From Ophelia neglecta (lineage: Eukaryota), in contig OZ260667.1 in the NCBI GenBank assembly GCA_965285935.1, forward strand, positions 55,304,001 to 55,368,000: a stretch of 64,000 nucleotides of DNA. Reading direction: 5' to 3'. Below are positions 9,225 through 64,000 of the stretch, piece after piece. Numbering within the stretch: the first letter of the stretch is position 1; the number at the start of each line of letters is the position of its first letter. The position numbers were made by a program, and so were the translations under genes. The notes beneath the pieces are model-generated. The model worked only from the letters and a program-made list of their open reading frames with translations, was not told where the DNA came from and ran no database searches.

Positions 9225-9790
9225 ATAAACCCTCCTCTCCTTGGCTGCCACATTTTGTGCTGTAAGCCCAACCCTCCCCCTGGCTGCCCCCTCTCCCCTC
9301 TGTAGCCTCAGTCTAGTCTTATACTGTCATTTACATGTTAATCTCTTGTGACAACAAAACAGGTTTCTCTGCATTATATCAGTACATCAGCATTGCATGA
9401 GAGTGCTATGTTAATCCCCTCCCCCCTCCTTCCCCCTTAGATAACCCTCCTCCCCTTGCCTGCCCCTTTTTGTGCTGTATGCCTAACCCTCCCCCTGGCT
9501 GCCCCCTCTCCCCTCTGTAGCCTCAGTCTAGTCTTATACTGTCATCTACATGTTAATCTCTTGTGACATCAAAACAGGTTTCTCTGCATTTTATTAGTAC
9601 ATCAGCATTGCATAAGAGTGCTAGGTAACCCACCCCCTTCCTTCCCCCCTTAGATAAGCCTCCTCCCCTTGGCTGCCAACCTCCCCCCCCCCCCAACACC
9701 CACCACCACCACCATAGCCATTTAGATGTTAATCTATTGTGTCAACAAAACAGGCTCACTCTGAATCTTATCAGTAATCAGCATGGCATG
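9225..9790. repeat. ~215-bp tandem repeat, about 2.5 copies, C-rich
   Basis: TGTAGCCTCAGTCTAGTCTTATACTGTC at 9301 and 9516; a degenerate third copy at ~9650-9790. Confidence 0.8.
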
Positions 9791-10110
9791 TTGAATCAAG
9801 GCAGGCTCAGCTCTGATGCAGTATTTCCCATGATGCACTGCTGTTGCTTGGCAACATCAGATATGGCATCAAGTATGGCTGCAAATGTTACAGACGACAG
9901 ATTTTCCCAAATTGCAAAAGCTTTTTGACTGCAAAACGCGCACAGCGCACCGCAATCTCACATACATTAGCACAACCACAGACGGTTCAGCAACAATCGG
10001 TGAAGATTTCAGGCACATCGGTTCGTTGAGGAACCGGGAAATCCATGTTGCACTACGGCAATATAATTATAGATCTGTGACTTGGTATCACAAGGTTAGC
10101 ATTCGCAAGG

Positions 10111-13100: not shown

Positions 13101-15682
13101 TTCACAGGAAAGTTTTGTTGGCGGTTGTCGAGATGAAGTCTAGTTCGTTGTATCAAGGTTATCAAGGTTACCGCACAATTACTTGAAATATATGCTATTT
13201 TGTTATTTTAGTTTTAAAGTTTAACACAGTTGTAAAGAATTAACAAATTATCAAAGTTTTATTTTCAAAATTTGTCTATTTTCTGATTTAGGACTTAATT
13301 GTAAAGAAACATGACTAAGTTACAGAAGCTTGAATAAAATCAAAATAGCTTTAGTGCCAACATCCAGTATAAAAATACGGACAAATCCCTAAATTGACAA
13401 AAATTACTTTACTGACACAATAACAATGACCTAACTGATACGATAAATAGACTATTTATGTATAGATCAATACTTGCGGTTTTACTAACCACACACCAGG
13501 TTTATTTTTAGAATCATAGGTAATTTTCAGTCATAGGTATATCTCGGGCATGAGTATATAGGCAGTGCACTCAGTGGCTCTCCGGTGTCCACTTATAGTT
13601 TGGTTTGAATGCACTTTACCTTACCATCGTACTGATCAGTAACTTTAAAAGTGTGTACACTCCAAAATGTACTCAGTGTAAAGAGTGTTTCATAAAGAGG
13701 TAAAATTACTTGTCATCACCTTGCAAGTTGTTTCCCGAGTTCAGCCCAGTGATTTTTCACAGGACCTCGCAATTGTACAAATTCCTCGACGAGAGCAGCG
13801 CCCCCTCCAGGCACACTGATTACCTAAATTGTATAATCTCATCTTGTAAAGCTGCGAAGCGCAGTGGTTTATATCCATAAAGTAAAAGTATATACCATGC
13901 CTAGGTATCTGCTAGGTATCTTATATCCTTTGACTATTTTGATATATGGACAATGTCATGTCGAAAGACATTTAGTGCAATCGTCGGCACATTAGCGAAG
14001 GATTGAATATTTGTTGTGGTGTCCTCTTGTTCAATCCTTCTCAGCATGTTATATTTTATTTTACATGTACAATTAATACACTAACCTTAAATGGCATTGG
14101 ACATCTGACAGTCTGGGTTCTATAAATAGCATCCAGACTAGCCCTTTCTCCCTCAAGCATCACATGACCCTGTAATAGAAAAAATAACTTCTGCAATAAC
14201 AACATATAAAACTTAAGCTAAAAGTCATTTTTTTCACACGCCACGACTAAAAAACGCGTGTATGTAATAGAGCTTCAGTTTAGCGGGTAGTTTCCCCATT
14301 CATTGTATGTGTATATCTTTGTAAACTTTAGAACAAGGCATATATGGGGACATTAGTTTCTAAACCATGTAAACCTTTCATATTACAAGTAGAAATGTAT
14401 ATGTAATTAAGAAAAATTTCATACCTGTGCTGTCCAACTGACTTTAACGAAAACAAGACCGTTGTTTGTCCGGTAAACACGTCCGCCGCATATAACTCCG
14501 CCCTTTGCCAATCCCACAAATTCTATAGAGGGTGTTCTCAGTTCCTTTCGCAGTGAAAGTTCTAATCGTGCAAAGTCGGCGTCTGATCCCTTCACCCTTG
14601 AACCGTCCAACAATGGCATCGTCCTCTACAATTTGTAGGTTCAGTTCCACTATGTACTAGTACTTTGGATTTAAACTTTTAATTTTAAAAGTACGTTTAT
14701 GAGCTATAAAAAACAGAGAGCAGTTGAAGAAGTGACATTTAGAAGGGAAAATTTGGGTATTTCACATAGGATAGTTTATCAATGAGCCCCCCCCCCCTCC
14801 CACCCCACGCGGGTTACTCAGCATTTACCCTGGGCAACGTTGTTCCGCTGAAAAGGCTTTGGTTTTCACATGTTAGTATTTGGATGGGTCTATATTTGTT
14901 CGATTTTGTATTTTGAAAGATCAGTAGTTCAGTTGTGGGGCACAAAAAAATAAGAAAATGTTACTGACAAAAATATGATGCTCTGACAACTATCCAGGAT
15001 ACGACTGCACTGCGGAAAACTCAACTTGTAAATCCAAATTAAAGCATCAAAGTATCACCGCGTACTATCGTAACCTCGTCTTATCACACAAAGTGTACTA
15101 TCAGCAGGGGGTCTATTATTGTCCCCATCACCTTAATTACTTAACTATTCAATTTACTTGACACTGACGGTAATACTACTCTCTATTCATATGGAATAGT
15201 ATACGATCCCTTCACCACTAACGACAGCTGATGATATCGTTGAGATGTTAAGTTTTTTATGAACAGTCTCTTGTTAGCAAGTGAAGCGTAACTAGCCTTA
15301 AGCAGAGAGGCAAGGACAACGTGTTCTCTCACGATTGAAAGGATATAGAAACCAGAGATAAGCGAAGTAGTCTAGAGTTCTTGTAATGTAGTAAAGATAA
15401 CGATGATAATTGATGCAACTTACTTTGTTAGAGTAGATCTGTGAGAATCATTTATTAGAATTGACTTTAAGTGTAGAGGCTTCCGGAAAGGGAACTTCCA
15501 CTTGACACGTCTACATATGATGACATTTACTATTGTTCTGAGGGACTATATGTCAGACACTATTTAATAGTATCTGCCTGTTGTGCCCTATAGTGGCAGT
15601 CTCCAACTCACCTGGGACTGTAGTGACCCCTGTTGGCTGATTGAATCTCTAAATACTGCTTATTTTCGTATCCAAGTGTACA
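10111..15682. repeat. Segmental duplication unit B (contains FN3K-like paralog B)
   Basis: Near-identical to 2226-7719 with an offset of ~7.9 kb; small indels in introns. Confidence 0.92.
10693..14619 (-). CDS. FN3K: Fructosamine/ketosamine-3-kinase family protein, divergent paralog B (8 exons, 316 aa)
   Basis: Exons (minus strand): 14425-14619, 14086-14169, 13720-13823, 13028-13139, 12218-12271, 11862-12003, 11159-11330, 10693-10780. Exon sizes and splice sites match paralog A and the frame is open. About nine amino-acid differences from A counted by eye (e.g. LHLHN>LHLDN, NYLNQW>NYITQW). Confidence 0.88.
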
Positions 15683-28336: not shown

Positions 28337-30903
28337 TCACCAAGGTCCCAAGGAGCGTTACCAAAGGCATTACCTAAGACGTTACCAAGGGAGATCACCA
28401 GCAGGCTTTACCAAGGGCAGTAACCAAGGGAGTTACCAAGGGCGATCACCAGCAAGCATTACACTGGGCTGTAACCAAGGCTGTTACCAAGGCGATTACC
28501 AGCAAGCATTACCCTGGGCTGTAACCAAGGCTGTTACCAAGGTGATCACCAGCAAGCATTTCCAGGGTATCACCAAGGATGATCACCAGCAAGCATTACC
28601 CTGGGCTGTAACCAAGCCCGTTACCAAGGCATTCACCAGCAAGCATTTCCAGGGTATCACCAAGGATGATCACCAGCAAGCATTACCCTGGGCTGTAACC
28701 AAGCCCGTTACCAAGGCATTCACCAGCAAGCATTTCCAGGGTATCACCAAGGATGATCACCAGCAAGCATTACCCTGGGCTGTAACCAAGCCCGTTACCA
28801 AGGCATTCACCAGCAAGCATTTCCAGGGTATCACCAAGGATGATCACCAGCAAGCATGATGAAGTAGAAACTAACCCAATCGCATCCATCCTTTAGCAGC
28901 TCTGGCTGTATCGAGTCATTACTCATCTCCTGAAGTGCTGCTTCTAGCTCGCTCTTGGCCCCAACAAAATTGGTCCCGCGACGACATATAAACCTGCGGG
29001 AGACATTAATAAACGAGTTAGCAATGAGAAGTATGAGCATCCTCTATATGTACAGCATGAGACGCAAGACACGTAAATTTCCAAGGGAGTTACCAAGGGC
29101 GATCACCAGCAAGCATTACCCTGGGCTGTAACCAAGGGCGATCACCAGCAAGCATTACCCTGGGCAGTAACCAAGCCCGTTACCAAGGCGATCACCAGCA
29201 AGCATTACACTGGGCTGTAACCAAGCCCGTTACCAAGGCGATCACAAGCAGGCATTTCCAAGGGAGTTACCAAGGGCGATCACCAGCAAGCATTACCCTG
29301 GGCTGTAACCAAGCCCGTTACCAAGGCGATCACCAGCAGGCATTTCCAAGGGAGTTACCAAGGGCGATCACCAGCAAGCATTACCCTGGGCTGTAACCAA
29401 GGGCGATCACCAGCAAGCATTACCCTGGGCTGTAACCAAGGCCGTTACCAAGGCGATCACCAGCAAGCATTACCCTGGGCTGTAACCAAGCCCGTTACCA
29501 AGGCGATCACCAGCAAGCATTACCCTGGGCTGTAACCAAGGCCGTTACCAGGGGCAATCACCAGCATGCATTACCCTGGGCTGTAACCAAGCCCGTTACC
29601 AAGGCGATCACCAGCAAGCATTACCCTGGGCTGTAACCAAGCCCGTTACCAAGGCGATCACCAGCAGGCATTTCCAAGGGAGTTACCAAGGGCGATCACC
29701 AGCAAGCATTATTCTGGGCTGTAACCAAGGCCGTTACCAAGGCGATCACCAGCAAGCATTACCCTGGGCTGTAACCAAGCCCGTTACCAAGGCGATCACC
29801 AGCAGGCATTTCCAAGGGAGTTACCAAGGGCGATCACCAGCAAGCATTACCCTGGGCTGTAACCAAGGGCGATCACCAGCAAGCATTACCCTGGGCTGTA
29901 ACCAAGGCCGTTACCAAGGCGATCACCAGCAAGCATTACCCTGGGCTGTAACCAAGGCCGTTACCAAGGCGATCACCAGCAAGCATTACCCTGGGCTGTA
30001 ACCAAGAGTGATCACCAGTAAGCATTACCCTAGGCTGTAACCAAGCCCGTTACCAAGGCGATCACAAGCAGGCATTTCCAAGGGAGTTACCAAGGGCGAT
30101 CACCAGCAAGCATTACCCTGGGCTGTAACCAAGGGCGATCACCAGCAAGCATTACCCTGGGCTGTAACCAAGGGCGATCACCAGCAAGCATTACACTGGG
30201 CTGTAACCAAGGCCGTTACCAAGGCGATCACCAGCAAGCATTACACTGGGCTGTAACCAAGGCCGTTACCAAGGCGATCACCAGCAAGCATTACCCTGGG
30301 CTGTAACCAAGGCCGTTACCAAGGCGATCACCAGCAAGCATTACCCTGGGCTGTAACCAAGGCCGTTACCAAGGCGATCACCAGCAAGCATTACCCTGGG
30401 CTGTAACTAAGAGTGATCACCAGTAAGCATTACCCTAGGCTGTAACCAAGCCCGTTACCAAGGCGATCACAAGCAGGCATTTCCAAGGGAGTTACCAAGG
30501 GCGATCACCAGCAAGCATTACCCTGGGCTGTAACCAAGGGCGATCACCAGCAAGCATTACCCTGGGCTGTAACCAAGGGCGATCACCAGCAAGCATTACA
30601 CTGGGCTGTAACCAAGGCCGTTACCAAGGCGATCACCAGCAAGCATTACCCTGGGCTGTAACCAAGGCCGTTACCAAGGCGATCACCAGCAAGCATTACC
30701 CTGGGCTGTAACCAAGGCCGTTACCAAGGCGATCACCAGCAGGCATTTCCAGGGTATCACCAAGGATGATCACCAGCAAGCATAACCCTGGGCTGTAACC
30801 AAGGCCGTTACCAGGGCAATCACCAGCAAGCAATACCCTGGGCTGTAACCAAGGCTGTTACCAAGGCAATCACCAGCAGGCATTTCCAAGGGCAGTTATC
30901 AAG
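28337..30903. repeat. Composite satellite of related 50/39/38/37-bp monomers, interrupted at 28858-29078
   Basis: Core GATCACCAGCAAGCATTACCCTGGGCTGTAACCAAGGCCGTTACCAAGGC. The left block has an 87-bp period; the right block mixes 50-, 39- and 38-bp variants. Confidence 0.95.
28858..29078 (-). mobile_element. 221-bp BEL/Pao integrase fragment inserted in the satellite
   Basis: Translates to FINVSRRFICRRGTNFVGAKSELEAALQEM...GCDW, the Pao integrase region. 28950-29078 is nearly identical to 36243-36370. Confidence 0.8.
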
Positions 30904-50076: not shown

Positions 50077-53000
50077 TTACTTCAAGGCTTTATTCAGCGA
50101 TTTTAGAATAGAAATGGTACTTCCTCTGTATCCTCCACCAAAGTGGTTCCTGAAATAAAACCCAATAACTTCCTTATGAATTCATAACTTTTCTGTTAAT
50201 CAAACATATTTTACACTGGGACATGCTGGCAGCGCTACCGTTCGGAAATTCCTAGAAGCCATATGAATACAGTATTGATCTATTTTAAAATAAATTTAGA
50301 AATAGAACACAATAAATTCCTTATGAATTCATAACTTTTCTGTTAATTAAACATATTTTACACTGGGACATGCTGGCAGCACTACCGTTCGGAAATTCCT
50401 AGAAGCTATATGAATACAGTATTGATCTATTAAAAGCGCCTCCTGGTGTGAAACCAGTGTGACACTTCTGTGACACTGGAGTGAAACCAGTGTGTCACTA
50501 GTGTGTCACTAGTGTGATACTTGTGAGGCACTAGTGTGACACTAGTGTGATACTAGTGTGACACTAGTGTGTCACTTCAGCAAACTAGTGTGCTGCCATA
50601 CACTAAACATGCAAGTACACTAGCTAGTGGCACACTAGTGTAGCACTAAAAATGCTGTTCACTGATTGAAGCCTTTAACTAGATCACAAAGGTTAATACA
50701 AATAAAAGTAAAAATAACTATAGGATGCAAAAGATATCATTAATCTGCTCCAATAGATGAATAAAAACAGACACAGATTATGCTACATGCACATTACACA
50801 AACAATATTACTGTTATGGTGAAAATGTGTCAGCTGGTTTAAATTCACCTTTTAGAAAAAAAAATGACACTTAGCATTTTTTTTCAATTTTGTGCCTAGA
50901 GAAAATTAGGGATATATACATACATTCGAATATGATATTAACAAGTTTTAATTTCGGACCAAGCTGTTATTCGCCAAATTCTCTTATTTCAACAAATGCT
51001 AACATTTTTACCATTACAGTATCTGATGTATCAAGGTAGATAGAAAAATACACAAGGATTATTTAAAAGCTCTAATGGCAAATAAATCCACAAGTTTGGA
51101 CCTTGGTACAAAAAGTCTTACGGAATTGTTGTCCTGATAAAGTGTTCAAGTGGGCAATTTAAGGTAGACACTTTTCACATGCAGGAAGTTTACTCAGGAA
51201 TATACTGTCCACCAGGTGTCTGCACCAGTTTAGTTCGCAAAACACTACAGTAATTTTGTAGAGTAATAAACAAGATGAAGATATTAGCCATAAATTTTTA
51301 CTAATACTGAAAAAGTAATGATCTCCTAACTGTTAATGAAATTCCAGCTAAATTGGAAGGTACTGAGAGAAAAACTGGATGGTATAATATGATGACATTT
51401 TTGCTATTTTTATGCAATTGAGCACAATTTATTTGATTGAAAGCTGACGGTCAGGTATCTGCGTAGGTTGATATTGACTTAATTACTTGTCGGTCTTCTA
51501 ACTCATATTGCTCGTTTATGCTTATATGAATAATTCAGGTGGAATATTGTGGAGCCAAAAACAGATAATGTTGACAAACCTAAATATATTAAGCTATGGA
51601 ACCAAACAACGGTTTAGTGACTAATGGCTTTGCTTTGCCTGTCAGGTATAGACTTCTGTTTTCTTTAGATAAGGGACTTGCGCTAGTCATTACGATGATA
51701 GTATCCATCATTGGTAGACTAAATGGACAATGTCCTCACAATTTTCTTTTTAGTTCATAAAGAGCCATTGTTCTAACGACTGACTTTGTAATTGTAGATC
51801 AAGGTCAAACTTTTAAAGCAGCATCAATCTCCTGTACACATTTCACTATATAGTATGCTTCCAATACATTTTCATTTCCAAATGTTTTCCTAGAGGCAGA
51901 GATTAAGCAGTACATGGCATAGTGGTTTGACCTTAAAATTGTAGACCAAAGTTAACCATATTCTATTTCCTACATGCTTCAAATATCTTTCTTACCACTT
52001 TCTATCAAGAGAGAAAAATGAGAGAATTAAAGCGGGAAAAAGTACTTATTTTTGTCCTTTTTTTGCTTGTATGATCAACGTAATATTCTAGAGGTGTAAG
52101 ATTTGGAACATTTTGAAAATGAAAAAGATTAAACTGGATAGGGGCAGAACTCCCATAACACTGGCTGAAATAAGAAATCAAATCAAATCAAATACAAACC
52201 AGTGGTTAAGGAAGTGGTGAAGATAGTAGTACAAACCAGTGGTCAAGGTAGTGATGAATGTAGAAGTACAAACCAGTGGTTAAGGGAGTGATGAAAGTAG
52301 TAGTACAAACCAGTGGTTAAGGAAGTGGTGAAGATAGTAGTACAAACCAGTGGTCAAGGTAGTGATGAATGTAGAAGTACAAACCAGTGGTTAAGGGAGT
52401 GATGAAAGTAGTAGTACAAACCAGTGGTTAAGGTAGTGGGGAAGATAATAGTACAAACCAGTGGTCAAAGTAGTGGTGAAGATAGTATTACAAACCAGTG
52501 GTTAAGGTAGTGGTGAAGATAGTAGTACAAACCAGTGGTTAAGGAAGTGGTGAAGATAATAGTATAAACCAGTGGTTAAGGTAGTGGTGAAGATAATAGT
52601 ACAAACCAGTGGTTAAGGAAGTGGTGAATGTAGTAGTACAAACCAGTGGTTAAGGTAGTGGTGAAGGTAGTAGTACAAACCAGTGGTCAAGGTAGTGGTG
52701 AAGATAGTAGTACAAACCAGTGGTTAAGGAAGTGGTAAAGATAGTAGTACAATCCAGTGGTTAAGGAAGTGGTTAAGATAGTAGTACAAACCAGTGGTCA
52801 AGGTAGTGGTGAAGATAATAGTACAAACCAGTGGTTAAGGAAGTGGGGAAGGTAGTAGTACAAACCAGTGGTCAAGGTAGTGGTGAAGATAGTAGTACAA
52901 ACCAGTGGTTAAGGTAGTGGTGAAGATAGTAGTACAAACCAGTGGTTAAGGAAGTGGTAAAGATAGTAGTACAATCCAGTGGTTAAGGAAGTGGTTAAGA

Positions 53001-56000
53001 TAGTAGTACAAACCAGTGGTCATGGTAGTGGTGAAGATAATAGTACAAACCAGTGGTTAAGGAAGTGGTGAAGATAATAGTACAAACCAGTGGTTAAGGT
53101 AGTGGTGAAGGTAGTAGTACAAACCAGTGGTTAAGGTAGTGGTGAAGGTAGTAGTACAAACCAGTGGTCAAGGTAGTGGTGAAGATAGTAGTACAAACCA
53201 GTGGTTAAGGTAGTGGTGAAGGTAGTAGTACAAACCAGTGGTTAAGGAAGTGGTGAAGGTAGTAGTACAAACCAGTGGTTAAGGAAGTGGTGAAGATAGT
53301 ATTACAAACCAGTGGTTAAGGTAGTGGTGAAGATAGTAGTACAAACCAGTGGTTAAGGTAGTGGTGAAGGTAGTAGTACAAACCAGTGGTTAAGGTAGTG
53401 GTGAAGATAGTAGTACAAACCAGTGGTTAAGGAAGTGGTGAAGGTAGTAGTACAAACCAGTGGTTAAGGTAGTGGTGAAGGTAGTAGTATAAACCAGTGG
53501 TTAAGGAAGTGGTGAAGATAATAGTACAAACCAGTGGTCAAGGTAGTGGTGAAGGTAGTAGTATAAACCAGTGGTTAAGGTAGTAGTGAAGATAGTAGTA
53601 CAAACCAGTGGTTAAGGTAGTAGTGAAGGTAGTAGTACAAACCAGTGGTTAAGGAAGTGGTGAAGGTAGTAGTATAAACCAGTGGTTACGACAGTGATAA
53701 ACGTAGTGGTACAAACCAGTGGTTAAGGTAGTGGAAGAGCTGGTACAGCTCCAGCCTTTCCTTGTATCCTGGTTTCTTGGGGATCAGTTTATGGTAAGAT
53801 GAGAAGAATTGTGAAGAGAACCCTCCGAACATCTGTGCTATGGCCAAGTCGTACTCATCATGACCATAAAAGGAGGCAGGGTCAAACACAACTGCAGAGA
53901 AAAACATGAAATAGACATTAAGAAAGTATGGTGTTGATTTGTGGCTAATTTTCTTCCGATGATATAGTTCAAGGGTGGGTGTGTTGGGAAGCAGTCAGGG
54001 GAATTGTAGGTGAAGAGCGTGTATTGTTGTATTGACGTTGTGTGACTGTCGCAGGGGGGTACATTTTTGGCACCTGTGTGTGGGGGGAGGGAGGGGGGCG
54101 TGCTTGCTTATAGAGCCCATCATGTTAAAGGATGTCATAAATCTACAGCATCCTGTGTAGGGGAGTCAAGTATCATTAAATGGCTGTTGTGTGCTTTTTT
54201 ATGCACAATATTTCCAGGAAAATAGCTGGGTAAACCGCTGGAAAAGCAGCTGGGATTAGTGCAGCAAGTGGGCTGGCAGTAGACAGCCCAGTGTCAGGGA
54301 GCAGCTGGGAAACTGGAAGCACTGGAATTGGAGGGGAATTGGAGGGGAATGGCTGTTTGATCGACAAGACTTTCAGTTGCCACTGTATGGTCCTTATCCA
54401 CGAGACTTAACTCACCTGGCCCGTCATTTATCTCCGCTGCATTTCCTCCCCAGAGGTCGCCATGTAACAGCGATGGAATGACCTCAATGTCCTTGAACAG
54501 TTGTGGTAACTTAGGTAACAAACTGGTCCAGAGCGCTCTTGCTTCACTATCACGGTACTGCAATAAATAGAAATCAAAATATATATAAAAAGGAAAAGAT
54601 GAATAAAAAGCTTGTAGCCCCTGGTGCTACACTCACGCCTCTACTTGTATTGGTGTTCCTTCCTATAAAATCATAACCTTTCTGTCAGTGTTCGACTTTT
54701 CAAGTTAACTCATTCGGTCCTATGCCTTAACAGACTTTCCTATACAAGCAAAGGCAAAGGGACAGCAAAGGGACCTTTCAACAGATTGGGCAGTCAAAGA
54801 GTCAAGGGGAGGTGGGGGTGGGGGTGGGGGGGGTGGGAGGGCGCAGTTGGAAAGAAGTTTGGGGGGGGGGGGGGAGAGGGAGGTGCACAGACTAGGGTTG
54901 TAAGGTCAGAGTGCCACATTTAAGTTAACAGTAAATGAAATTCAATTAAACAAATGTCCAATCCTGAGTGACAAAAAATGAAGACTTTTGGTCATTTAAA
55001 AAGGCTGATCCCAAGGGTCAGAAGCCCCCCCCTCTCCTCTTAATACTACTACAGGTGACACACACAAACACAATATCAATACTACTCACCTCTTGTTCAA
55101 TCATGTCCAGCTGAGGTGTCAACTTATGCTGGGTGTAAAACTCCTGTAAAGAAAAAAAGCAAAAGCCTGAAGAAATTAACATACGAAACACAAATGGGGC
55201 AGAGGAGAGTGGGTGATGGGTGACTCCTTCCAGAAGGGATACTGACCAATCAAATGGACGTGGAGAGAGACCTAAAAAAGTTAACAATTCTACAGTAGTA
55301 TGATACTTTTTTCTTTTGCTTCTGTTTTCATTTTCATAGTGACACCTACCACTTTATCTGGAGAAACAACTTGTAAAAGTTAAATTCAATCCTTTTGGCT
55401 GGGAGTTGCCTGCTGCACTCTGTATTATTGTTGCAGGTTATTGGTGAAATAAATCTGTTGGTAGACACATATACAGCTTATAATAGACTGATGGTTGCTT
55501 GGAACCACAACACTACTCACATTGGTTGTTTTGTCATACTACTTTAAAGGATCCAAGTTGCTTACCAACCAATTTGTCTCCCATGTATTGGGCTGTGGGA
55601 TGAAACCACAACATGTGGGAATATGGAATCCAAAGCGAGGCTCAAACTCTCCGCCCTCTGATTGGTCAGTCTTGTGGACACTGCTGGACTGGGCTTCCTC
55701 TTTGTCTTTAAGAGACCGATTGTGGAGATGCAATCTGAAACCAAATTTCAGCTTAGATAATGTGAGATTATGCCAAAATAATATTACAAATCTTTTGTTT
55801 TTGGTCTGAAATATTTATCTGGTACATGCTGAAGAAATAGTTAGAGAGACTTTACCACTTCATTTTAAGTTTTCCATAATTTTGATGCCAATTAATTTTT
55901 CAATTAAACTAACATAAAGCAAGGTATGCCAGTTTGGGACATTTTTCCATATGCAATTTACATATTACTGCGCTGCACCCATACTCCTATATTAGCCCCT

Positions 56001-59000
56001 GCTCAGCCCCATACTCACTGGGCTAGTCGTGTTCCCAGATCCCCAGCATACTTCCTGTTCCTATATTAGCCCCTGCTCAGCCCCATACTCACTGGGCTAG
56101 TCGTGTTCCCAGATCCCCAGCACACTTCCTGTTCCTATATTAGCCCCTGCTCAGCCCCATACTCACTGGGCTAGTCGTGTTCCCAGATCCCCAGCATACT
56201 TCCTGTTCCTATATAAGCCCCTGCTCAGCCCAATACTCACTGGGCTAGTCGTGTTCCCAGATCCCCAGCACACTTCCTGTTCCTATATTAGCCCCTGCTC
56301 AGCCCCATACTCACTGGGCTAGTCATGTTCCCAGATCCCCAGCACACTTCCTGTTCCTATATTAGACCCTGCTCAGCCCCATACTCACTGGGCTAGTCGT
56401 GTTCCCAGATCCCCAGCACACTTCCTGTTCCTATATTAGACCCTGCTCAGCCCCATACTCACTGGGCTAGTCGTGTTCCCAGATCCCCAGCATACTTCCT
56501 GTTCCTATATTAGACCCTGCTCAGCCCCATACTCACTGGGCTAGTCATGTTCCCAGATCCCCTGCATACTTCCTGTTCCTATATTAGCCCCTGCTCAGCC
56601 CCATACCCACTGGGCTAGTCATGTTCCCAGATCCCCTGCATACTTCCTGTTCCTATATTAGCCCCTGCTCAGCCCCATACTCACAGGGCTAGTCGTGTTC
56701 CCAGATCAGCCCCTGCTCAGCCCCATACTCACTGGGCTAGTCATGTTCCCAGATCCCCTGCATACTTCCTGTTCCTATATTAGCCCCTGCTCAGCCCCAT
56801 ACTCTCTGGGCTAGTCGTGTTCCCTGATCAGCCCCTGCTCAGCCCCATACTCACTGGGCTAGTCGTGTTCCCAGATCAGCCCCTGCCCAGCCCCATACTC
56901 ACTGGGCTAGTCGTGTTCCCAGATCCCCTGCATACTTCCTGTTCCTATATTAGCCCCTGCTCAGCCCCATACTCACTGGGCTAGTCATGTTCCCAGATCC
57001 CCTGCATACTTCCTGTTCCTATATTAGCCCCTGCTCAGCCCCGTACTCACTGGGCTAGTCGTGTTCCCTGATCAGCCCCTGCTCAGCCCCATACTCTCTG
57101 GGCTAGTCGTGTTCCCTGATCAGCCCCTGCTCAGCCCCATACTCACTGGGCTAGTCGTGTTCCCAGATCAGCCCCTGCCCAGCCCCATACTCACTGGGCT
57201 AGTCGTGTTCCCAGATCCCCTGCATACTTCCTGTTCCTATATTAGCCCCTGCTCAGCCCCATACTTACTGGGCTAGTCATGTTCCCAGATCCCCTGCATA
57301 CTTCCTGTTCCTATATTAGCCCCTGCTCAGCCCCGTACTCACTGGGCTAGTCATGTTCCCAGATCAGCCCCTGCCCAGCCCCATATTCACTGGGCTAGTC
57401 ATGTTCCCAGATCCCCTGCATACTTCCTGTTCCTATATTAGCCCCTGCTCAGCCCCGTACTCACTGGGCTAGTCGTGTTCCCTGATCAGCCCCTGCTCAG
57501 CCCCATACTCTCTGGGCTAGTCTTGTTCCCTGATCAGCCCCTGCTCAGCCCCATACTCACTGGGCTAGTCGTGTTCCCAGATCAGCCCCTGCCCAGCCCC
57601 ATACTCACTGGGCTAGTCGTGTTCCCAGATCCCCTGCATACTTCCTGTTCCTATATGAGCCCCTGCTCAGCCCCATACTCACTGGGCTAGTCATGTTCCC
57701 AGATCCCCTGCATACTTCCTGTTCCTATATTAGCCCCTGCTCAGCCCCATACTCACTGGGCTAGTCGTGTTCCCAGATCCCCTGCACACTTCCTCTTCCT
57801 ATATTAGCCCCTGCTCAGCCCCATACTCACTGGGCTAGTGGTGTTCCCAGATCCCCAGCACACTTCCTGTTCCTATATTAGCCCCTGCTCAGCCCCATAC
57901 TCACTGGGCTAGTAATGTTCCCAGATCCCCTGCATACTTCCTGTTCCTATATTAGCCCCTGCTCAGCCCCATACTCTCTGGGCTAGTCATGTTCCCAGAT
58001 CCCCTGCATACTTCCTGTTCCTATATTAGCCCCTGCTCAGCCCCATACTCACTGGGCTAGTTGTGTTCCCAGATCAGCCCCTGCCCAGCCCCATACTCAC
58101 TGGGCTAGTCGTGTTCCCAGATCCCCTGCATACTTCCTGTTCCTATATTAGCCCCTGCTCAGCCCCATACTCACTGGGCTAGTCATGTTCCCAGATCCCC
58201 TGCATACTTCCTGTTCCTATATTAGCCCCTGCTCAGCCCCATACTCTCTGGGCTAGTCGTGTTCCCAGATTAGCCCCTGCTCAGCCCCGTACTCACTGGG
58301 CTAGTCATGTTCCCAGATCCCCAGCACACTTCCTGTTCCTATATTAGCCCCTGCTCAGCCCCATACTCACTGGGCTAGTGGTGTTCCCAGATCCCCTGCA
58401 TACTTCCTGTTCCTATATTAGCCCCTGCCCTGCCCCATACTCACTGGGCTAGTCGTGTTCCCAGATCCCCTGCATACTTCCTGTTCCTATATTAGCCCCT
58501 GCCCTGCCCCATACTCACTGGGCTAGTCGTGTTCCCAGATCCCCAGCACACTTCCTGTTCCTATATTAGCCCCTGCTCAGCCCCATACTCACTGGGCTAG
58601 TGGTGTTCCCAGATCCCCTGCATACTTCCTCTTCCTATATTAGCCCCTGCTCAGCCCCATACTCACTGGGCTAGTCATGTTCCCAGGTCCCCTGCATACT
58701 TCCTCTTCCTATATTAGCCCCTGCTCAGCCCCATACTCACTGGGCTAGTCGTGTTCCCAGATCCCCAGCACACTTCCTGTTCCTATATTAGCCCCTGCTC
58801 AGCCCCATACTCACTGGGCTAGTCATGTTCCCAGGTCCCCTGCATACTTCCTGTTCCTATATTAGCCCCTGCTCAGCCCCATACTCACTGGGCTAGTGGT
58901 GTTCCCAGATCCCTTGCACACTTCCTGTTCCTATATTAGCCCCTGCTCAGCCCCATACTCACTGGGCTAGTCGTGTTCCCAGATCATCCCCTGCTCAGCC

Positions 59001-62000
59001 CCATACTCACTGGGCTAGTCGTGTTCCCAGATCCCCAGCACACTTCCTGTTCCTATATTAGCCCCTGCTCAGCCCCATACTCACTGGGCTAGTAATGTAC
59101 CCAGAACCCCTGCATACTTCCTGTTCCTATATTAGACCCTGCTCAGCCCCATACTCACTGGGCTGGTCGTGTTCCCAGATCCCTTGCATACTTCCTGTTC
59201 CTATATTAGCCCCTGCTCAGCCCCATACTCACTGGGCTAGTCGTGTTCCCAGATCCCCTGCATACTTCCTGTTCCTATATTAGCCCCTGCTCAGCCCCAT
59301 ACTCACTGGGCTAGTCGTGTTCCCAGATCCCCTGCATACTTCCTGTTCCTATATTAGCCCCTGCTCAGCCCCATACTCACTGGGCTAGTCGTGTTCCCAG
59401 ATCCCCTGCATACTTCCTGTTCCTATATTAGCCCCTGCTCAGCCCCATACTCTCTGGGCTAGTCATGTTCCCAGATCCCCTGCATACTTCCTGTTCCTAT
59501 ATTAGCCCCTGCTCAGCCCCATACTCACTGGGCTAGTCGTGTTCCCAGATCAGCCCCTGCCCAGCCCCATACTCACTGGGCTAGTCGTGTTCCCAGATCC
59601 CCTGCATACTTCCTGTTCCTATATTAGCCCCTGCTCAGCCCCATACTCACTGGGCTAGTCATGTTCCCAGATCCCCTGCATACTTCCTGTTCCTATATTA
59701 GCCCCTGCTCAGCCCCATACTCTCTGGGCTAGTCGTGTTCCCAGATTAGCCCCTGCTCAGCCCCGTACTCACTGGGCTAGTCATGTTCCCAGATCCCCAG
59801 CACACTTCCTGTTCCTATATTAGCCCCTGCTCAGCCCCATACTCACTGGGCTAGTGGTGTTCCCAGATCCCCTGCATACTTCCTGTTCCTATATTAGCCC
59901 CTGCCCTGCCCCATACTCACTGGGCTAGTCGTGTTCCCAGATCCCCTGCATACTTCCTGTTCCTATATTAGCCCCTGCCCTGCCCCATACTCACTGGGCT
60001 AGTCGTGTTCCCAGATCCCCAGCACACTTCCTGTTCCTATATTAGCCCCTGCTCAGCCCCATACTCACTGGGCTAGTGGTGTTCCCAGATCCCCTGCATA
60101 CTTCCTCTTCCTATATTAGCCCCTGCTCAGCCCCATACTCACTGGGCTAGTCATGTTCCCAGGTCCCCTGCATACTTCCTCTTCCTATATTAGCCCCTGC
60201 TCAGCCCCATACTCACTGCGCTAGTCGTGTTCCCAGATCCCCAGCACACTTCCTGTTCCTATATTAGCCCCTGCTCAGCCCCATACTCACTGGGCTAGTC
60301 ATGTTCCCAGGTCCCCTGCATACTTCCTGTTCCTATATTAGCCCCTGCTCAGCCCCATACTCACTGGGCTAGTGGTGTTCCCAGATCCCTTGCACACTTC
60401 CTGTTCCTATATTAGCCCCTGCTCAGCCCCATACTCACTGGGCTAGTCGTGTTCCCAGATCATCCCCTGCTCAGCCCCATACTCACTGGGCTAGTCGTGT
60501 TCCCAGATCCCCAGCACACTTCCTGTTCCTATATTAGCCCCTGCTCAGCCCCATACTCACTGGGCTAGTAATGTACCCAGAACCCCTGCATACTTCCTGT
60601 TCCTATATTAGACCCTGCTCAGCCCCATACTCACTGGGCTGGTCGTGTTCCCAGATCCCTTGCATACTTCCTGTTCCTATATTAGCCCCTGCTCAGCCCC
60701 ATACTCACTGGGCTAGTCGTGTTCCCAGATCCCCTGCATACTTCCTGTTCCTATATTAGCCCCTGCTCAGCCCCATACTCACTGGGCTAGTCGTGTTCCC
60801 AGATCCCCTGCATACTTCCTGTTCCTATATTAGCCCCTGCTCAGCCCCATACTCACTGGGCTAGTAATGTTCCCAGGTCCCCTGCATACTTCCTCTTCCT
60901 ATATTAGCCCCTGCTCAGCCACATACTCACTGGGCTAGTCGTGTTCCCAGATCCCCAGCACACTTCCTGTTCCTATATTAGCCCCTGCTCAGCCCCATAC
61001 TCACTGGGCTAGTAATGTTCCCAGGTCCCCTGCATACTTCCTCTTCCTATATTAGCCCCTGCTCAGCCCCATACTCACTGGGCTAGTCGTGTTCCCAGAT
61101 CAGCCCCTGCCCAGCCCCATACTCACTGGGCTAGTCATGTTCCCAGATCCCCAGCACACTTCCTGTTCCTATATTAGCCCCTGCTCAGCCCCATACTCAC
61201 TGGGCTAGTCATGTTCCCAGGTCCCCTGCATACTTCCTCTTCCTATATTAGCCCCTGCTCAGCCCCATACTCACTGGGCTAGTCATGTTCCCAGATCCCC
61301 AGCACACTTCCTGTTCCTATATTAGCCCCTGCTCAGCCTCATACTCACTGGGCTAGTCGTGTTCCCAGATCATCCCCTGCTCAGCCCCATACTCACTGGG
61401 CTAGTCGTGTTCCCAGATCCCCTGCATACTTCCTGTTCCTATATTAGCCCCTGCCCTGCCCCATACTCACTGGGCTAGTCGTGTTCTCAGATCCCCTGCA
61501 TACTTCCTGTTCCTATATTAGCCCCTGCTCAGCCCCATACTCACTGGGCTAGTCGTGTTCCCAGATCCCCTGCATACTTCCTGTTCCTATATTAGCCCCT
61601 GCTCAGCCCCATACTCACTGGGCTAGTGGTGTTCCCAGAACCCCTGCATACTTCCTGTTCCTATATTAGCCCCTGCTCAGCCCCATACTCACTGGGCTAG
61701 TGGTGTTCCCAGATCCCCTGCATACTTCCTGTTCCTATATTAGCCCCTGCTCAGCCCCATACTCACTGGGCTAGTGGTGTTCCCAGATCCCCTGCATACT
61801 TCCTGTTCCTATATTAGCCCCTGCTCAGCCCCATACTCACTGGGCTAGTCGTGTTCCCAGATCCCCTGCATACTTCCTGTTCCTATATTAGCCCCTGCTC
61901 AGCCCCATACTCACTGCGCTAGTCGTGTTCCCAGATCCCCAGCACACTTCCTGTTCCTATATTAGCCCCTGCTCAGCCCCATACTCACTGGGCTAGTCGT

Positions 62001-64000
62001 GTTCCCAGATCCCCAGCACACTTCCTGTTCCTATATTAGCCCCTGCTCAGCCCCATACTCACTGGGCTAGTCGTGTTCCCAGATCCCCAGCACACTTCCT
62101 GTTCCTATATTAGCCCCTGCTCAGCCCCATACTCACTGGGCTAGTCGTGTTCCCAGATCCCCAGCACACTTCCTGTTCCTATATTAGTCCCTGCTCAGCC
62201 CCATACTCACTGGGCTGGTCGTATTCCCAGATCAGCCCCTGCTCAGCCCCATACTCACTGGGCTAGTCGTGTTCCCAGATCCCCTGCATACTTCCGGAGG
62301 CCTGACAGGTCTAAATACTCAGTCACTAGCATGGCTCCTCCAATGGGATTGTCCAACACCTGCATACCATGTAAAATAATACAATTAATGAACTCTCTCC
62401 ATATTTATATTCACAGTATTGTTTACTACCTTTAGTTCATAGGCATTAATATTTGCTTATTTTCACATGGAGCATATCTGAAGCTGTTTAATAATGCATT
62501 CTGTGTCTGGCGATGAATATCTTCGGATTTTTGTGTAGTTGTGAAAATGAGTCTGAAAAGTAGTAAAGATTTAAATCCTAGCGTAGGTGGAGAGTGCTAA
62601 TACCAAATAAAGCTAGGACCTTGCAGAGGTAAACAGTGGTACAACTATTCACAACACTATACTAAGATGGTGGGTGACAAGGCCACGCTTAAAAATATTC
62701 TCTTTGCGGGTAACAGGCCCCCAAAAAATCCATAAGGTCGGTAGGAAATAATTTTTTTTTATGAGTGGGGTGGCAGCACTTCCTATATTCCATATTAAAG
62801 CAAATATAACATGATAAGTAACTGAGAGACGAGGGGGTTTATGGGTATGTCATCATTGTTCGTTTAAAAAACTTCTTATGTTGCATCAGATGTTCGAATA
62901 TAACCCGTGAAAACATCAAAAAAAAAACACAAGGAAAAAAGCGTCCTTCGCCATCATTTTGCAGTCGTCTCCCGCCATCATTTTGTCAGTCGACTGATCG
63001 GCAAACTGCGTCTATTCATATTACACGGCGAGTACTACCGAAGTTTACCGAACACCGTTGGAATCCCAAACATTCTTTGGCAATAAATTTTTGTGCTGCA
63101 AAAGAATCTTGACATTAGATCTAATAGTCCAAACTGTAAATTAGCAGCAAGCATTCAAGTGGGAAGATGGGTGAATTGCGGCTTTGCTCACAGCGAGCGG
63201 CAATATAATTGAAGTAGTATGAGTTTTGCTAACTGCAGTTCTGTTTTCCCAATCGGGGGAGCCGAACAAGCCTAGCCATATCTTTACTGGTAGACTTCGT
63301 ATCGTCAAAATTACATCATTTCAAGGACGATTTGAGCTTGAAAATGTTTTTTTCTGAATCGAAAAAAATTATGTCTATGCAGGAGGTTTGGACACCATAC
63401 GGCTGGGTTACCCGCAACGAGAATATTTTTAAGACTGGCCCAATTTAACGCTCCAAATCCACAATAGATTGATGGGGAGCAGTTCCCGCCATATTTTCAG
63501 GGGCAAAAACCGCTCTCGAAATAATTCCCTATCCAGCCTGGTTGACAGAGTACCCTCTATGCTACTTAACTATATCCTGTATACTACTTAATGCTCCAAC
63601 TTATCTGTGAGTATGGTGAAAGTGCAATAAAAGAAGCAGTATTATAGGTAGTGGCATAGTTATGTACTTGATAAGTGAAGTAAAATTGGAATCAGTAATT
63701 CGCTGAAGAACACAAGTTAATTTGTTATAAAACAAAGCCCTTGAAGCCAATGTGTAGGCTGCAGCCCCCCCCCCCCCCTGCATAAATACAAACTTATCTC
63801 TTCCTTCGAGACTTGTATTGAAAAGCTTACAGTGGATGCTCTTCTTCTTCCGTGTCAGGGAAAATGAGAAATTAATATAGAAAATATATGTTTTAAACCA
63901 CTATAAACATAAGAATTTATTTCTTACCATGATGGGTTTGGGACACCAGACTGTGTCTGTCTTATACATGGCTTCCAAGCTGGCAAATTCTCCATCAAAC
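50077..64000 (-). CDS. FN3KRP: Ketosamine-3-kinase / FN3K-related protein, conserved copy; 5' end lies beyond the window
   Basis: Exons (minus strand): >64000-63928 ([24 protein letters not shown]), 62259-62359 ([24 protein letters not shown]), 55566-55734 ([16 protein letters not shown]), 55090-55143, 54416-54557 ([12 protein letters not shown]), 53717-53891 ([34 protein letters not shown]), 50077-50149 ([24 protein letters not shown]). All introns are GT-AG with consistent phases, at the same positions as in paralogs A/B. Confidence 0.93.
50152..50432. repeat. 147-bp tandem duplication abutting the last acceptor site
   Basis: TCCTTATGAATTCATAACTTTTCTG at 50171 and 50318; two near-identical copies. 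Confidence 0.9.
50447..50645. repeat. 11-bp minisatellite (ACTAGTGTGAC-like, semi-palindromic)
   Basis: Repeated CACTAGTGTG/GTGTCACTA motifs. Confidence 0.75.
52193..53734 (-). repeat. 37-bp tandem array (~40 copies) derived from the FN3K exon 7/intron 7 donor junction
   Basis: Sense unit TACTATCTTCACCACTACCTTAACCACTG|GTTTGTAC. The real junction at 53717/53716 reads CTCTTCCACTACCTTAACCACTG|GTTTGTAC. Confidence 0.95.
55985..62295 (-). repeat. 74-bp/48-bp tandem array (~6.3 kb, roughly 90 units) derived from the FN3K exon 3/intron 3 donor junction
   Basis: Sense unit GGAAGTATGCAGGGGATCTGGGAACACGACTAGCCCA|GTGAGTATGGGGCTGAGCAGGGGCTAATATAGGAACA. The first 37 nt are identical to the end of exon 62259-62359. 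Confidence 0.97.
62681..63440. mobile_element. 760-bp PIF/Harbinger-like non-autonomous transposon in FN3K intron 2
   Basis: TIR GGCCACGCTTAAAAATATTCTCTTTGCGGGTAAC / GTTACCCGCAACGAGAATATTTTTAAGACTGGCC, flanked by a CAA 3-bp duplication. Confidence 0.85.

What the first reader, a model, noticed from the sequence alone, without database searches (positions are those of the whole stretch)
55985..62359. 6.3-kb array built from 37 nt of exon 3 plus 37 nt of intron 3, making up ~96% of the intron
Seen: intron 3 spans 55735-62258, and only ~250 bp at its 3' end is unique. The 74-bp monomer is the last 37 coding nt (encoding [12 protein letters not shown]) plus 37 intronic nt starting with the strong consensus donor GTGAGT. 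A 48-bp variant is explicable by slippage between the GCAGGGG present in both halves. The distal end (ATAGGAGTATG) resembles the exon-side start (GGAAGTATG), a candidate seeding microhomology. The spliceosome must choose the first of ~90 equivalent donors, the one farthest from the acceptor.
Basis: seen in the sequence. Interest (0 to 1): 0.8.

Follow-up and report, generated by a model that had tools for sequence, protein, structure and literature searches.

The report
Splice-donor minisatellite in FN3K intron
An intron of an intact fructosamine-3-kinase gene is almost entirely filled by about 91 tandem copies of its own exon end plus splice donor; this kind of repeat is already known from a few human genes, but this one is unusually large and recurs in other genes of this genome.

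Summary
On the minus strand, intron 3 (62258..55735, 6524 nt) of an intact 8-exon FN3K-like gene is 96% tandem array: 72 units of 74 nt, 19 of 48 nt and a truncated last unit. Each 74-nt unit is the last 37 nt of exon 3 plus the first 37 nt of the intron. This gives 92 donor positions, 74 of them identical over 11 nt. Any read-through past the first donor meets an in-frame TGA at once.

The array is unique to this locus in the 762-Mb genome. It contains a 1.47-kb internal duplication with only 2 mismatches, so it was reshaped recently.

The kind is already known: minisatellites whose first monomer spans an exon-intron boundary (human F7, IFI6, CBS, LMNB2, PDGFA; PMC1557585). There, only the most upstream donor, or the first few, are used.

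This case is larger. It is paired with a second such array in intron 7, which the scan also noted under s1-733622 and s1-733668. I found the same architecture in dynein heavy-chain and atlastin genes of this genome.

No RNA data were available, so donor usage is inferred, not shown.

The 48-nt unit is a 26-nt deletion, whereas slippage between the GCAGGGG copies would remove 29 nt. The seeding microhomology is weak.

The parts
62259..62359 (-). Exon 3 of the FN3K-like gene (101 nt, VLDNPIGG...GTRLA plus 2 nt of a split Gln codon). Its last 37 nt (62295..62259) are the first, exonic half-unit of the array.
   Evidence: Aligns to plant ribulosamine/fructosamine kinase 6oid_A residues 107-135. 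A Logan contig runs from intron 2 through the exon to 62266.
62251..62261 (-). Presumed authentic 5' splice site CCA|GTGAGTAT (cut between 62259 and 62258). It forms 8 contiguous base pairs with the U1 5' end.
   Evidence: It is the only donor whose use keeps the frame into exon 4.
55985..62258 (-). Intronic minisatellite: 72 units of 74 nt, 19 units of 48 nt and a truncated last unit, giving 91 decoy donor positions. The coding strand is 38% G and 66% purine and has no polypyrimidine tract.
   Evidence: It is found only at this locus in the genome.
57916..60865 (-). Two tandem copies of a 1476-nt block of about 20 units (60865..59392 and 59389..57916), differing at 2 of 1474 positions. This is a recent intra-array duplication.
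55962..55986 (-). Degenerate partial copy of the intron half of the unit, directly after the truncated last unit. It has no GT donor.
   Evidence: local alignment score 25, P = 0.0006 against shuffles; sequence.
55735..55961 (-). Unique 3' tail of intron 3, carrying the branch-point region, the pyrimidine-rich stretch and the tttcag acceptor.
55566..55734 (-). Exon 4 (A plus 56 codons, [10 protein letters not shown]...TNWL).
   Evidence: Pfam PF03881 E = 4e-4. Aligns to human FN3K 9woi_A residues 111-165, E = 7e-11.
53717..53891 (-). Exon 7 (..[12 protein letters not shown] + TG). Its last roughly 17-20 nt start the second array.
   Evidence: Pfam PF03881 E = 1e-22.
52193..53716 (-). Second donor-anchored array, in intron 7: 42 donor positions at exactly 37-nt spacing, 33 of them CTG|GTTTGTAC. 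The coding strand is pyrimidine-rich. The array fills about 43% of the 3567-nt intron.
   Evidence: Unique to this locus.
50077..50149 (-). Exon 8, coding part (G + [23 protein letters not shown], then stop).
63928..64000 (-). Exon 2 (..[28 protein letters not shown]). It runs slightly past the window end. Exon 1 (MEAAICEGLG..KVFVKVN) lies about 700-830 nt beyond the window.
   Evidence: L027 = window 64001-74000.

Best explanation
This is a locus-specific intronic minisatellite. It was born by tandem duplication of a 74-nt DNA segment that straddles the exon 3 / intron 3 junction of an intact FN3K-like gene. It then grew and was kept homogeneous by unequal exchange or replication slippage.

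It is transcribed as part of intron 3. Functional mRNA is made by joining the first donor (62259|62258) to the acceptor at 55735|55734.

The 91 downstream copies are decoys. They are most likely ignored because only the first donor sits at normal exon distance (101 nt) from a real upstream 3' splice site. That is the exon-definition, or 5'-to-3' 'oriented scanning', rule shown for human F7 and similar genes. The purine-rich array offers no 3' splice site of its own. Occasional use of the nearest decoys would include the in-frame TGA and should be removed by nonsense-mediated decay.

The array is best seen as a tolerated by-product of a minisatellite-rich genome, not as a device.

Shown: the anatomy, the frame consequences, uniqueness in the genome, recent turnover, and recurrence in other genes. 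Inferred: which donor is used, the decay of mis-spliced products, and neutrality.
For: Structure and counts.

Gene intact, and colinear with solved FN3K structures only if the first donor is used.

Immediate in-frame TGA after the first donor, and stops in all frames of the array.

No pyrimidine run longer than 4 nt. None of 734 AG dinucleotides has at least 60% pyrimidines in the 19 nt upstream.

Predicted accessibility of authentic and decoy donors is similar (0.60 against 0.46-0.63), so local RNA structure does not explain the choice.

The unit is found nowhere else in the 762-Mb genome.

A 1476-nt block is duplicated with 2 mismatches.

Precedent, with minigene proof that only the most upstream of identical donors is used and that added repeats do not change this: PMC1557585.

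The same architecture sits behind homology-confirmed exons of cytoplasmic dynein heavy chain (about 62 units), axonemal dynein heavy chain (about 61 units) and atlastin (about 8 units) in this genome.

Unitigs from the source sample's reads that fall inside the array have word depths in the hundreds to thousands, against 13-21 in the unique flank. The tool warns that this is not a copy number.
Against: No RNA evidence at all. The run index returned only three DNA-like runs of one sample, and a word search with exon 4 found no transcript-derived protein fragments.

From my own knowledge of in-vitro work with duplicated strong 5' splice sites (Eperon and colleagues, 1990s), the site nearest the 3' splice site can win when all sites are occupied by U1. 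The F7 study itself found that perfect-consensus pseudo-sites do compete.

In IFI6 and CBS the two nearest pseudo-sites are used as well, so some unproductive splicing is likely here.

Two such arrays in one gene is mildly unexpected under pure chance: my rough estimate is about 5% given the first.
Confidence: 0.72

Rival explanations
1. The array is a regulatory device. About 84 usable decoy donors capture U1 or the spliceosome. Part of the transcripts is then spliced unproductively (premature stop and decay) or is detained in the nucleus, and array length sets FN3K output.
For: Every decoy choice ends in a stop. 73 decoys are identical to the authentic site. A second array sits in intron 7 of the same gene. 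Decoy splice sites that promote intron retention are an established idea (PMC6097662).
Against: The same architecture occurs behind exons of unrelated housekeeping genes, which fits a mutational by-product. The array is turning over rapidly. The two arrays share no composition or motif apart from their position. The decoy-exon model needs a 3' splice site next to the decoy donor, and the array has none. No expression data exist.
Confidence: 0.1
2. Exon-end/donor junctions are a true mutational hotspot for minisatellite birth in this genome, for example through transcription- or splicing-linked replication problems. The FN3K arrays would then be products of that process, not of chance placement.
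For: Three AGGTGAGT motifs at 20-50 nt spacing give 1219 matches against 233 for the reversed control. At 50-80 nt spacing the figures are 1205 against 242. 4 of 6 such arrays inspected start at a real or likely exon end. One gene holds two arrays. First-stage notes s1-734120 and s1-733639 claim further genes (not tested).
Against: The counts are of matches, not loci, and a few large arrays dominate them. The AGGTRAGT search was swamped by an unrelated dispersed 53-nt satellite. Selecting arrays by a donor motif enriches for exon-anchored ones by construction. The window holds 9 array loci in 64 kb. If that is typical, roughly 1% straddling a donor by chance already gives hundreds genome-wide (my estimate). 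The two FN3K arrays have opposite strand composition, so there is no common sequence driver.
Confidence: 0.2
3. Assembly artefact: the array is real but its length or internal order is wrong, or it is spurious.
For: The 1476-nt near-perfect internal duplication is the kind of feature an assembler can create. Only one sample is available.
Against: 34 distinct 74-nt unit variants are arranged in an ordered pattern. Array unitigs have word depths in the hundreds to thousands, against 13-21 in the flank, in three runs. A contig joins intron 2, exon 3 and the start of the repeat. 6.3 kb is within the span of modern long reads.
Confidence: 0.05
4. The gene is decaying, and the arrays reflect relaxed constraint, with paralogs supplying the function.
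For: There are six PF03881 loci in the genome, several in tandem nearby.
Against: All eight exons are open and have canonical boundaries. This copy gives the best family score of the six (79.5 bits for exon 7). It is the one closest to human FN3K. The nearby paralogs are much more diverged (41% identity in exon 3).
Confidence: 0.05

Closest known systems
Human F7 intron 7 minisatellite (37-bp VNTR; Borensztajn et al. 2006, PMC1557585)
   Same: The first monomer spans the exon-intron boundary, so the authentic donor is followed by identical pseudo-donors. The rest of the array is intronic. The productive mRNA uses the most upstream site. Extra repeats (up to 12 tested) did not change the choice.
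   Different: F7 has 5-9 copies, only 4 nt of exon per unit, and a weak donor (TGG|gtgggt). Here there are 92 donor positions over 6.3 kb, 37 nt of exon per unit, a GTGAGTAT intron side, two unit lengths, and every decoy choice gives an immediate stop. In F7 donor usage was shown by experiment; here it is inferred.
Human IFI6 (6-16) intron 2, CBS intron 13, LMNB2 and PDGFA intron 4 minisatellites (as listed in PMC1557585)
   Same: Arrays of 10-26 units that repeat the exon end and the donor. In LMNB2 and PDGFA only the authentic site is used. In IFI6 and CBS the two nearest pseudo-sites are also used.
   Different: Copy numbers are three to nine times lower, and each gene has a single array. 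The FN3K-like gene has two, in introns 3 and 7.
Decoy exons / detained introns (Parra et al. 2018, PMC6097662)
   Same: Unproductive splice sites inside a long intron that could engage the splicing machinery.
   Different: Decoy exons have both a 3' and a 5' splice site and are conserved. This array has donors only, no polypyrimidine tract, and rapid turnover.
Ordinary intronic minisatellites / VNTRs
   Same: Unit length, internal variant structure, higher-order duplication, locus-specific sequence.
   Different: The array starts inside the coding exon and multiplies a functional splice signal.

Membership tests
Minisatellite whose first monomer spans an exon-intron boundary (F7/IFI6/CBS type) | Head-to-tail tandem array of units 10-100 nt long | tested here: met
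   TRF period 74, 81.8 copies. 72 x 74 nt plus 19 x 48 nt.
Minisatellite whose first monomer spans an exon-intron boundary (F7/IFI6/CBS type) | The first unit contains the 3' end of a real coding exon and its donor | tested here: met
   The last 37 nt of exon 3 equal the consensus of the exon-derived half of the unit. Exon identity is supported and by the flanking exons.
Minisatellite whose first monomer spans an exon-intron boundary (F7/IFI6/CBS type) | The donor sequence is reiterated unchanged in the intron | tested here: met
   73 decoys are identical to the authentic 11-mer, and 11 more keep GT.
Minisatellite whose first monomer spans an exon-intron boundary (F7/IFI6/CBS type) | Only the most upstream donor, or the first few, are used in mRNA | not testable with these tools
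   No RNA run for this organism. No transcript-derived protein fragment found. The frame argument supports it only indirectly.
Minisatellite whose first monomer spans an exon-intron boundary (F7/IFI6/CBS type) | Copy number varies between alleles (VNTR) | not testable with these tools
   Only one sample. The near-identical 1476-nt internal duplication suggests instability.
Fructosamine-3-kinase family (Pfam PF03881) | Exons match the family profile and are colinear with solved FN3K structures | tested here: met
Exon 7 E = 1e-22 and exon 4 E = 4e-4. Exon 4 aligns to human FN3K residues 111-165. Exons 1, 2, 5, 6 and 8 were recognised by eye from their translations.
Decoy exon (intron-detention element) | A cryptic exon bounded by a usable 3' splice site and a 5' splice site | tested here: not met
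   The longest pyrimidine run in the array is 4 nt, and no AG has a pyrimidine-rich upstream stretch.
Recursive splice site | An acceptor AG directly followed by a regenerated GT donor | tested here: not met
   The unit reads CCCAG|TGAGT. Cutting after that AG leaves TGAGT, not GT.

The most novel reading that the evidence does not exclude
Minisatellites seeded on exon-end/5' splice-site junctions are a systematically over-represented class in this genome. They are found in FN3K (twice), cytoplasmic and axonemal dynein heavy chains, atlastin and more. They would be produced by a transcription- or splicing-linked mutational process, and some of them, such as the 91-decoy FN3K array, would measurably tune expression through unproductive splicing.
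Probability: 0.15. Interest if true: 0.7.

Novelty: new member of a known kind. Interest (0 to 1): 0.4.

Why it matters
This is a natural, extreme test case for how a 5' splice site is chosen. 74 identical donors are spread over 6.3 kb in front of one acceptor, in a gene that appears functional. Known examples have at most about 25 pseudo-sites.

Arrays of about 60 units sit behind exons of genes as essential as cytoplasmic dynein heavy chain. Together with FN3K, this suggests that the rule 'use the donor that closes the exon' tolerates very large numbers of decoys.

In practice such arrays are traps for gene annotation and for spliced-read alignment, because a junction can be placed at any of 92 equal sites. 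They are also likely length-polymorphic loci that could affect expression.

It does not reveal a new kind of element.

Tried and rejected
1. RNA evidence. The look-up of sequencing runs gave only three DNA-like Logan-contig runs of one sample. The single read-laying run could therefore only show that contigs support the exon 3 / repeat junction and that array words are deep.

2. A loose end in one X3 contig at 62277 looked like a possible array-free allele. Its letters belong to a dispersed repeat with 46 copies, mostly on C12, so the contig is a chimeric join. Rejected.

3. A word search with the exon 4 translation, meant to catch transcript-derived fragments spanning the junction, found nothing.

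The large representative-protein search was not used, because the protein's identity was not in doubt.

5. The AGGTRAGT x3 pattern was swamped by an unrelated 53-nt dispersed satellite, so it gives no enrichment test.

6. A search for the 'LDB' gene of note s1-733639 through Pfam PF01803 found nothing, so that note stays untested.

8. G-quadruplex idea. The array has 357 G-runs but only 7 canonical motifs with loops of 7 nt or less, and the second array is G-poor. There is no common driver.

9. RNA structure hiding the decoys. Predicted accessibility is similar for authentic and decoy donors.

10. The paralogs carry no arrays at the equivalent introns, so they give no information on the ancestral intron.
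Full report
**What is there**

The finding lies on the minus strand. Exon 3 of an FN3K-like gene runs 62359..62259. It is preceded by an AG acceptor and ends ...CTAGCCCA, followed by GTGAGT. Exon 4 begins at 55734 after tttcag. The intron between them is 6524 nt.

TRF finds one array, 55985-62233, with period 74 and 81.8 copies, plus many 48-nt sub-arrays. I anchored on the donor motif and cut the array into units. This gives 92 donor positions from 62258 to 56018, made of 72 units of 74 nt, 19 units of 48 nt and a truncated last unit. The array is 6274 nt, or 96.2% of the intron, and the unique tail is about 250 nt.

The consensus 74-mer is the first 37 nt of the intron followed by a stretch identical to the last 37 nt of exon 3.
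- 15 of 72 units match the exon perfectly in that half.
- Mean identity to the exon is 95.9%.
- Mean pairwise identity among units is 95.6%.
- There are 34 distinct unit sequences.

**The gene**

Pfam PF03881 (fructosamine kinase) matches exon 7 (E = 1e-22) and exon 4 (E = 4e-4). Exon 4 aligns from its first residue to human FN3K structure 9woi_A residues 111-165. Exon 3 aligns to the plant enzyme 6oid_A residues 107-135, and exon 4 continues at 137.

Exon 1 (MEAAICEGLG...) lies about 700-830 nt beyond the window end. Exon 2 straddles the window end. Exons 5, 6 and 7 lie at about 55143, 54551 and 53891, and exon 8 is 50149..50077.

All exons are open, so 'exon 3' and 'intron 3' are correct labels and the gene looks intact. 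I searched the exons one by one by reference. The joined protein was not searched.

The genome (762 Mb, 223 contigs) has six PF03881 loci. The two paralogs in this window have short intron 3 equivalents without arrays.

**Consequences for splicing, read from the sequence**

The exon ends in phase 2..GCC CA|G TGA GT. Any transcript that passes the first donor therefore meets TGA at once. The array has more than 140 stops in each frame.

Donor 11-mers:

| 11-mer | count |
|---|---|
| CCA\|GTGAGTAT (the authentic site plus 73 decoys) | 74 of 92 |
| GAGAGT, GT lost | 7 |
| single-base variants, one of them GTAAGT | 11 |

The site forms 8 contiguous pairs with the U1 5' end. Its duplex energy is -7.6 kcal/mol, against -14.0 for the perfect consensus. 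It is a good site but not a perfect one, with mismatches at -1 and -2.

The coding strand of the array is 38% G and 66% purine. Its longest pyrimidine run is 4 nt. None of its 734 AG dinucleotides has a pyrimidine-rich upstream stretch. The array therefore offers donors but no acceptors.

Predicted accessibility is similar for the authentic site (0.60) and the decoys (0.46-0.63). There is no AATAAA or ATTAAA in the array.

**Origin and dynamics**

The 74-nt unit occurs nowhere else in the genome.

A block of 1476 nt (about 20 units) is present twice in tandem, at 60865..59392 and 59389..57916. The copies differ at only 2 of 1474 positions, which is a recent unequal exchange.

The two halves of the unit share a similar stretch: GCAGGGG, then ATCTGGGAACA in one half and ATATAGGAACA in the other (P = 0.007 against shuffles). 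The GCAGGGG copies are 29 nt apart, so slippage between them would give 45-nt units. The real short unit lacks 26 nt. It equals the first 25 nt of the intron half plus the last 23 nt of the exon half. That is the register in which the two ..GGAACA blocks align. Two short units (59772 and 58296) have the crossover inside the shared AT.

At the distal end the last unit stops after ...CTAATATAGGA. The unique flank that follows (55986..55962) is a degenerate copy of the intron half of the unit (P = 0.0006). However, slippage between those two short matches would give a 68-nt unit, not 74 nt. It remains only a candidate.

**Support from reads**

Only three runs hold this locus. All are DNA-like Logan contigs from one sample. 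Laid on 61700-62700:
- One contig per run covers intron 2 and exon 3 and stops at 62266-62277, just inside the repeat, as expected for short-word assembly.
- Contigs inside the array have word depths from tens to over a thousand, against 13-21 in the flank. The tool warns that depth is not copy number, so I take this only as consistency with a many-copy array.
- One contig's loose end at 62277 belongs to a dispersed repeat and is a chimeric join.

No RNA run was available, and a word search with exon 4 found no transcript-derived fragments. Donor usage therefore could not be tested.

**What is known**

Borensztajn et al. 2006 (PMC1557585) describe exactly this class: minisatellites whose first monomer spans an exon-intron boundary.

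| Human gene | Array |
|---|---|
| F7 intron 7 | 37 bp, 5-9 copies |
| IFI6 intron 2 | 25 pseudo-sites |
| CBS intron 13 | 15-20 repeats |
| LMNB2 | 100 bp x 10-15 |
| PDGFA intron 4 | 81 bp x 16-18 |

In F7 minigenes:
- All pseudo-sites are functional, but only the most upstream one is used.
- Inactivating the first site activates the next.
- Adding repeats changes nothing.
- Only pseudo-sites that match the consensus perfectly compete.
- The farther the first usable site lies from its normal place, the more the exon is skipped.

In IFI6 and CBS the two nearest pseudo-sites are also used. This matches exon definition. Here only the first donor lies at normal exon distance (101 nt) from a real acceptor, and the next ones lie at 149, 223 and 297 nt.

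I therefore expect the first donor to be used almost exclusively. A minor share may use the nearest decoys and would be removed by nonsense-mediated decay. This step is inferred.

**Recurrence**

The same gene carries a second array. There are 42 donor positions at exactly 37-nt spacing (52193-53716), built from the last 17-20 nt of exon 7 plus its weak GTTTGT donor. It is also unique in the genome. It is pyrimidine-rich, the opposite of the first array.

I then searched the whole genome for three AGGTGAGT motifs at minisatellite spacing.
- At 20-50 nt spacing: 1219 matches, against 233 for the reversed control.
- At 50-80 nt spacing: 1205 matches, against 242.

These are counts of matches, not loci.

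I fetched six such arrays on contig C1. Four begin at an acceptor-ORF-donor unit:
- Three are homology-confirmed exons.
  - Cytoplasmic dynein 1 heavy chain residues 4463-4505 (E = 9e-14), followed by about 62 units of 44-46 nt.
  - Axonemal dynein heavy chain 3 residues 2125-2171 (E = 1e-20), followed by about 61 units of 34 nt.
  - Atlastin-1 residues 331-349 (E = 2e-5), followed by about 8 identical 23-nt units.
- The fourth is a coiled-coil ORF with 5 units of 57 nt.

First-stage notes mention further genes; I did not test them.

The FN3K array is thus one of many in this genome. Whether that is more than chance is open.
- The window holds 9 array loci in 64 kb.
- If that is typical, about 1% of new short duplications would straddle a donor by chance (roughly 200,000 donors x 50 nt in 762 Mb).
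- That already gives hundreds of such arrays genome-wide and a few dozen genes with two.
- This is my rough estimate.

**Verdict**

The splicing 'puzzle' has a known answer from human genes, though it is untested here.

The element is a new and very large member of a known kind. What is worth recording is its scale (91 decoys over 6.3 kb), its doubling within one gene, and the recurrence of such arrays behind exons of essential genes in this genome.

Noticed in passing
window 52193-53734 (minus strand): Second donor-anchored array in the same gene. It has 42 donor positions at exactly 37-nt spacing, made of the end of exon 7 (..HYLNH+TG) plus a weak GTTTGT donor. It fills about 43% of intron 7. 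Read-through gives a stop after 9 codons.
   Followed up: yes
L037:692-3682 (G000:C1:7848400-7853400, minus strand): An exon of cytoplasmic dynein 1 heavy chain (residues 4463-4505 by PDB alignment) is followed by about 62 tandem units of 44-46 nt. The units are made of the exon end plus AAG|GTGAGT and contain a long G-run.
   Followed up: partly
L042:892-3065 (G000:C1:86803000-86811000, minus strand): An exon of an axonemal dynein heavy chain (DNAH3-like, residues 2125-2171) is followed by about 61 units of 34 nt. The units are almost wholly the last 30 nt of the exon plus GTGA. The donor's AGT is the first AGT of the exon-derived segment.
   Followed up: partly
L038:1006-1228 (G000:C1:8490700-8492900, plus strand): An atlastin-1-like 57-nt exon (AYIKIYQGDELPEPKSMLQ) is followed by 7.8 perfectly identical 23-nt units carrying CAG|GTGAGT. 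100% identity suggests a very young array.
   Followed up: partly
L039:1335-1769 (G000:C1:29565000-29568500, plus strand): A coiled-coil ORF exon ending ..ELQMKYEP is followed by 5.2 units of 57 nt that repeat its end plus CAG|GTGAGTTATAT. The gene was not identified; the Pfam hits are weak.
   Followed up: partly
G000:C1, many loci (e.g. 632241-633467, 657050-658273, 1373958-1408158): A dispersed 53-nt satellite family whose unit happens to contain AGGTAAGT. It dominates any genome-wide count of donor-motif arrays.
   Followed up: no
window 28381-30903: A large 50-nt / 88-nt array of about 38 units. On the minus strand its units carry donor-like AGG|GTAATG and TTG|GTAAC. Its upstream edge (about 30940-30880) reads like acceptor, then a short open frame, then a donor. 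It may be a third junction-anchored array or a coding repeat. Not resolved.
   Followed up: partly
window 2783-14619: Two tandem, diverged FN3K paralogs (exon 7 equivalents at 3244-3414 and 11158-11328; exon 3 equivalents at 5755-5856 and 13722-13823). They have compact introns and no arrays. The genome holds six PF03881 loci in all.
   Followed up: partly
window 62459, 62528, 62595 (intron 2): Contigs of runs X2 and X3 carry a 6-nt deletion, a 1-nt deletion and a T>G change relative to the window, whereas X1 matches it. This is probably the other haplotype of the same sample.
   Followed up: no
L029-L036 and 46 places, mostly G000:C12:59.4-64.4 Mb: A dispersed repeat family, clustered on one chromosome arm, that contains the 29-mer seen as a loose end of an X3 contig.
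   Followed up: no
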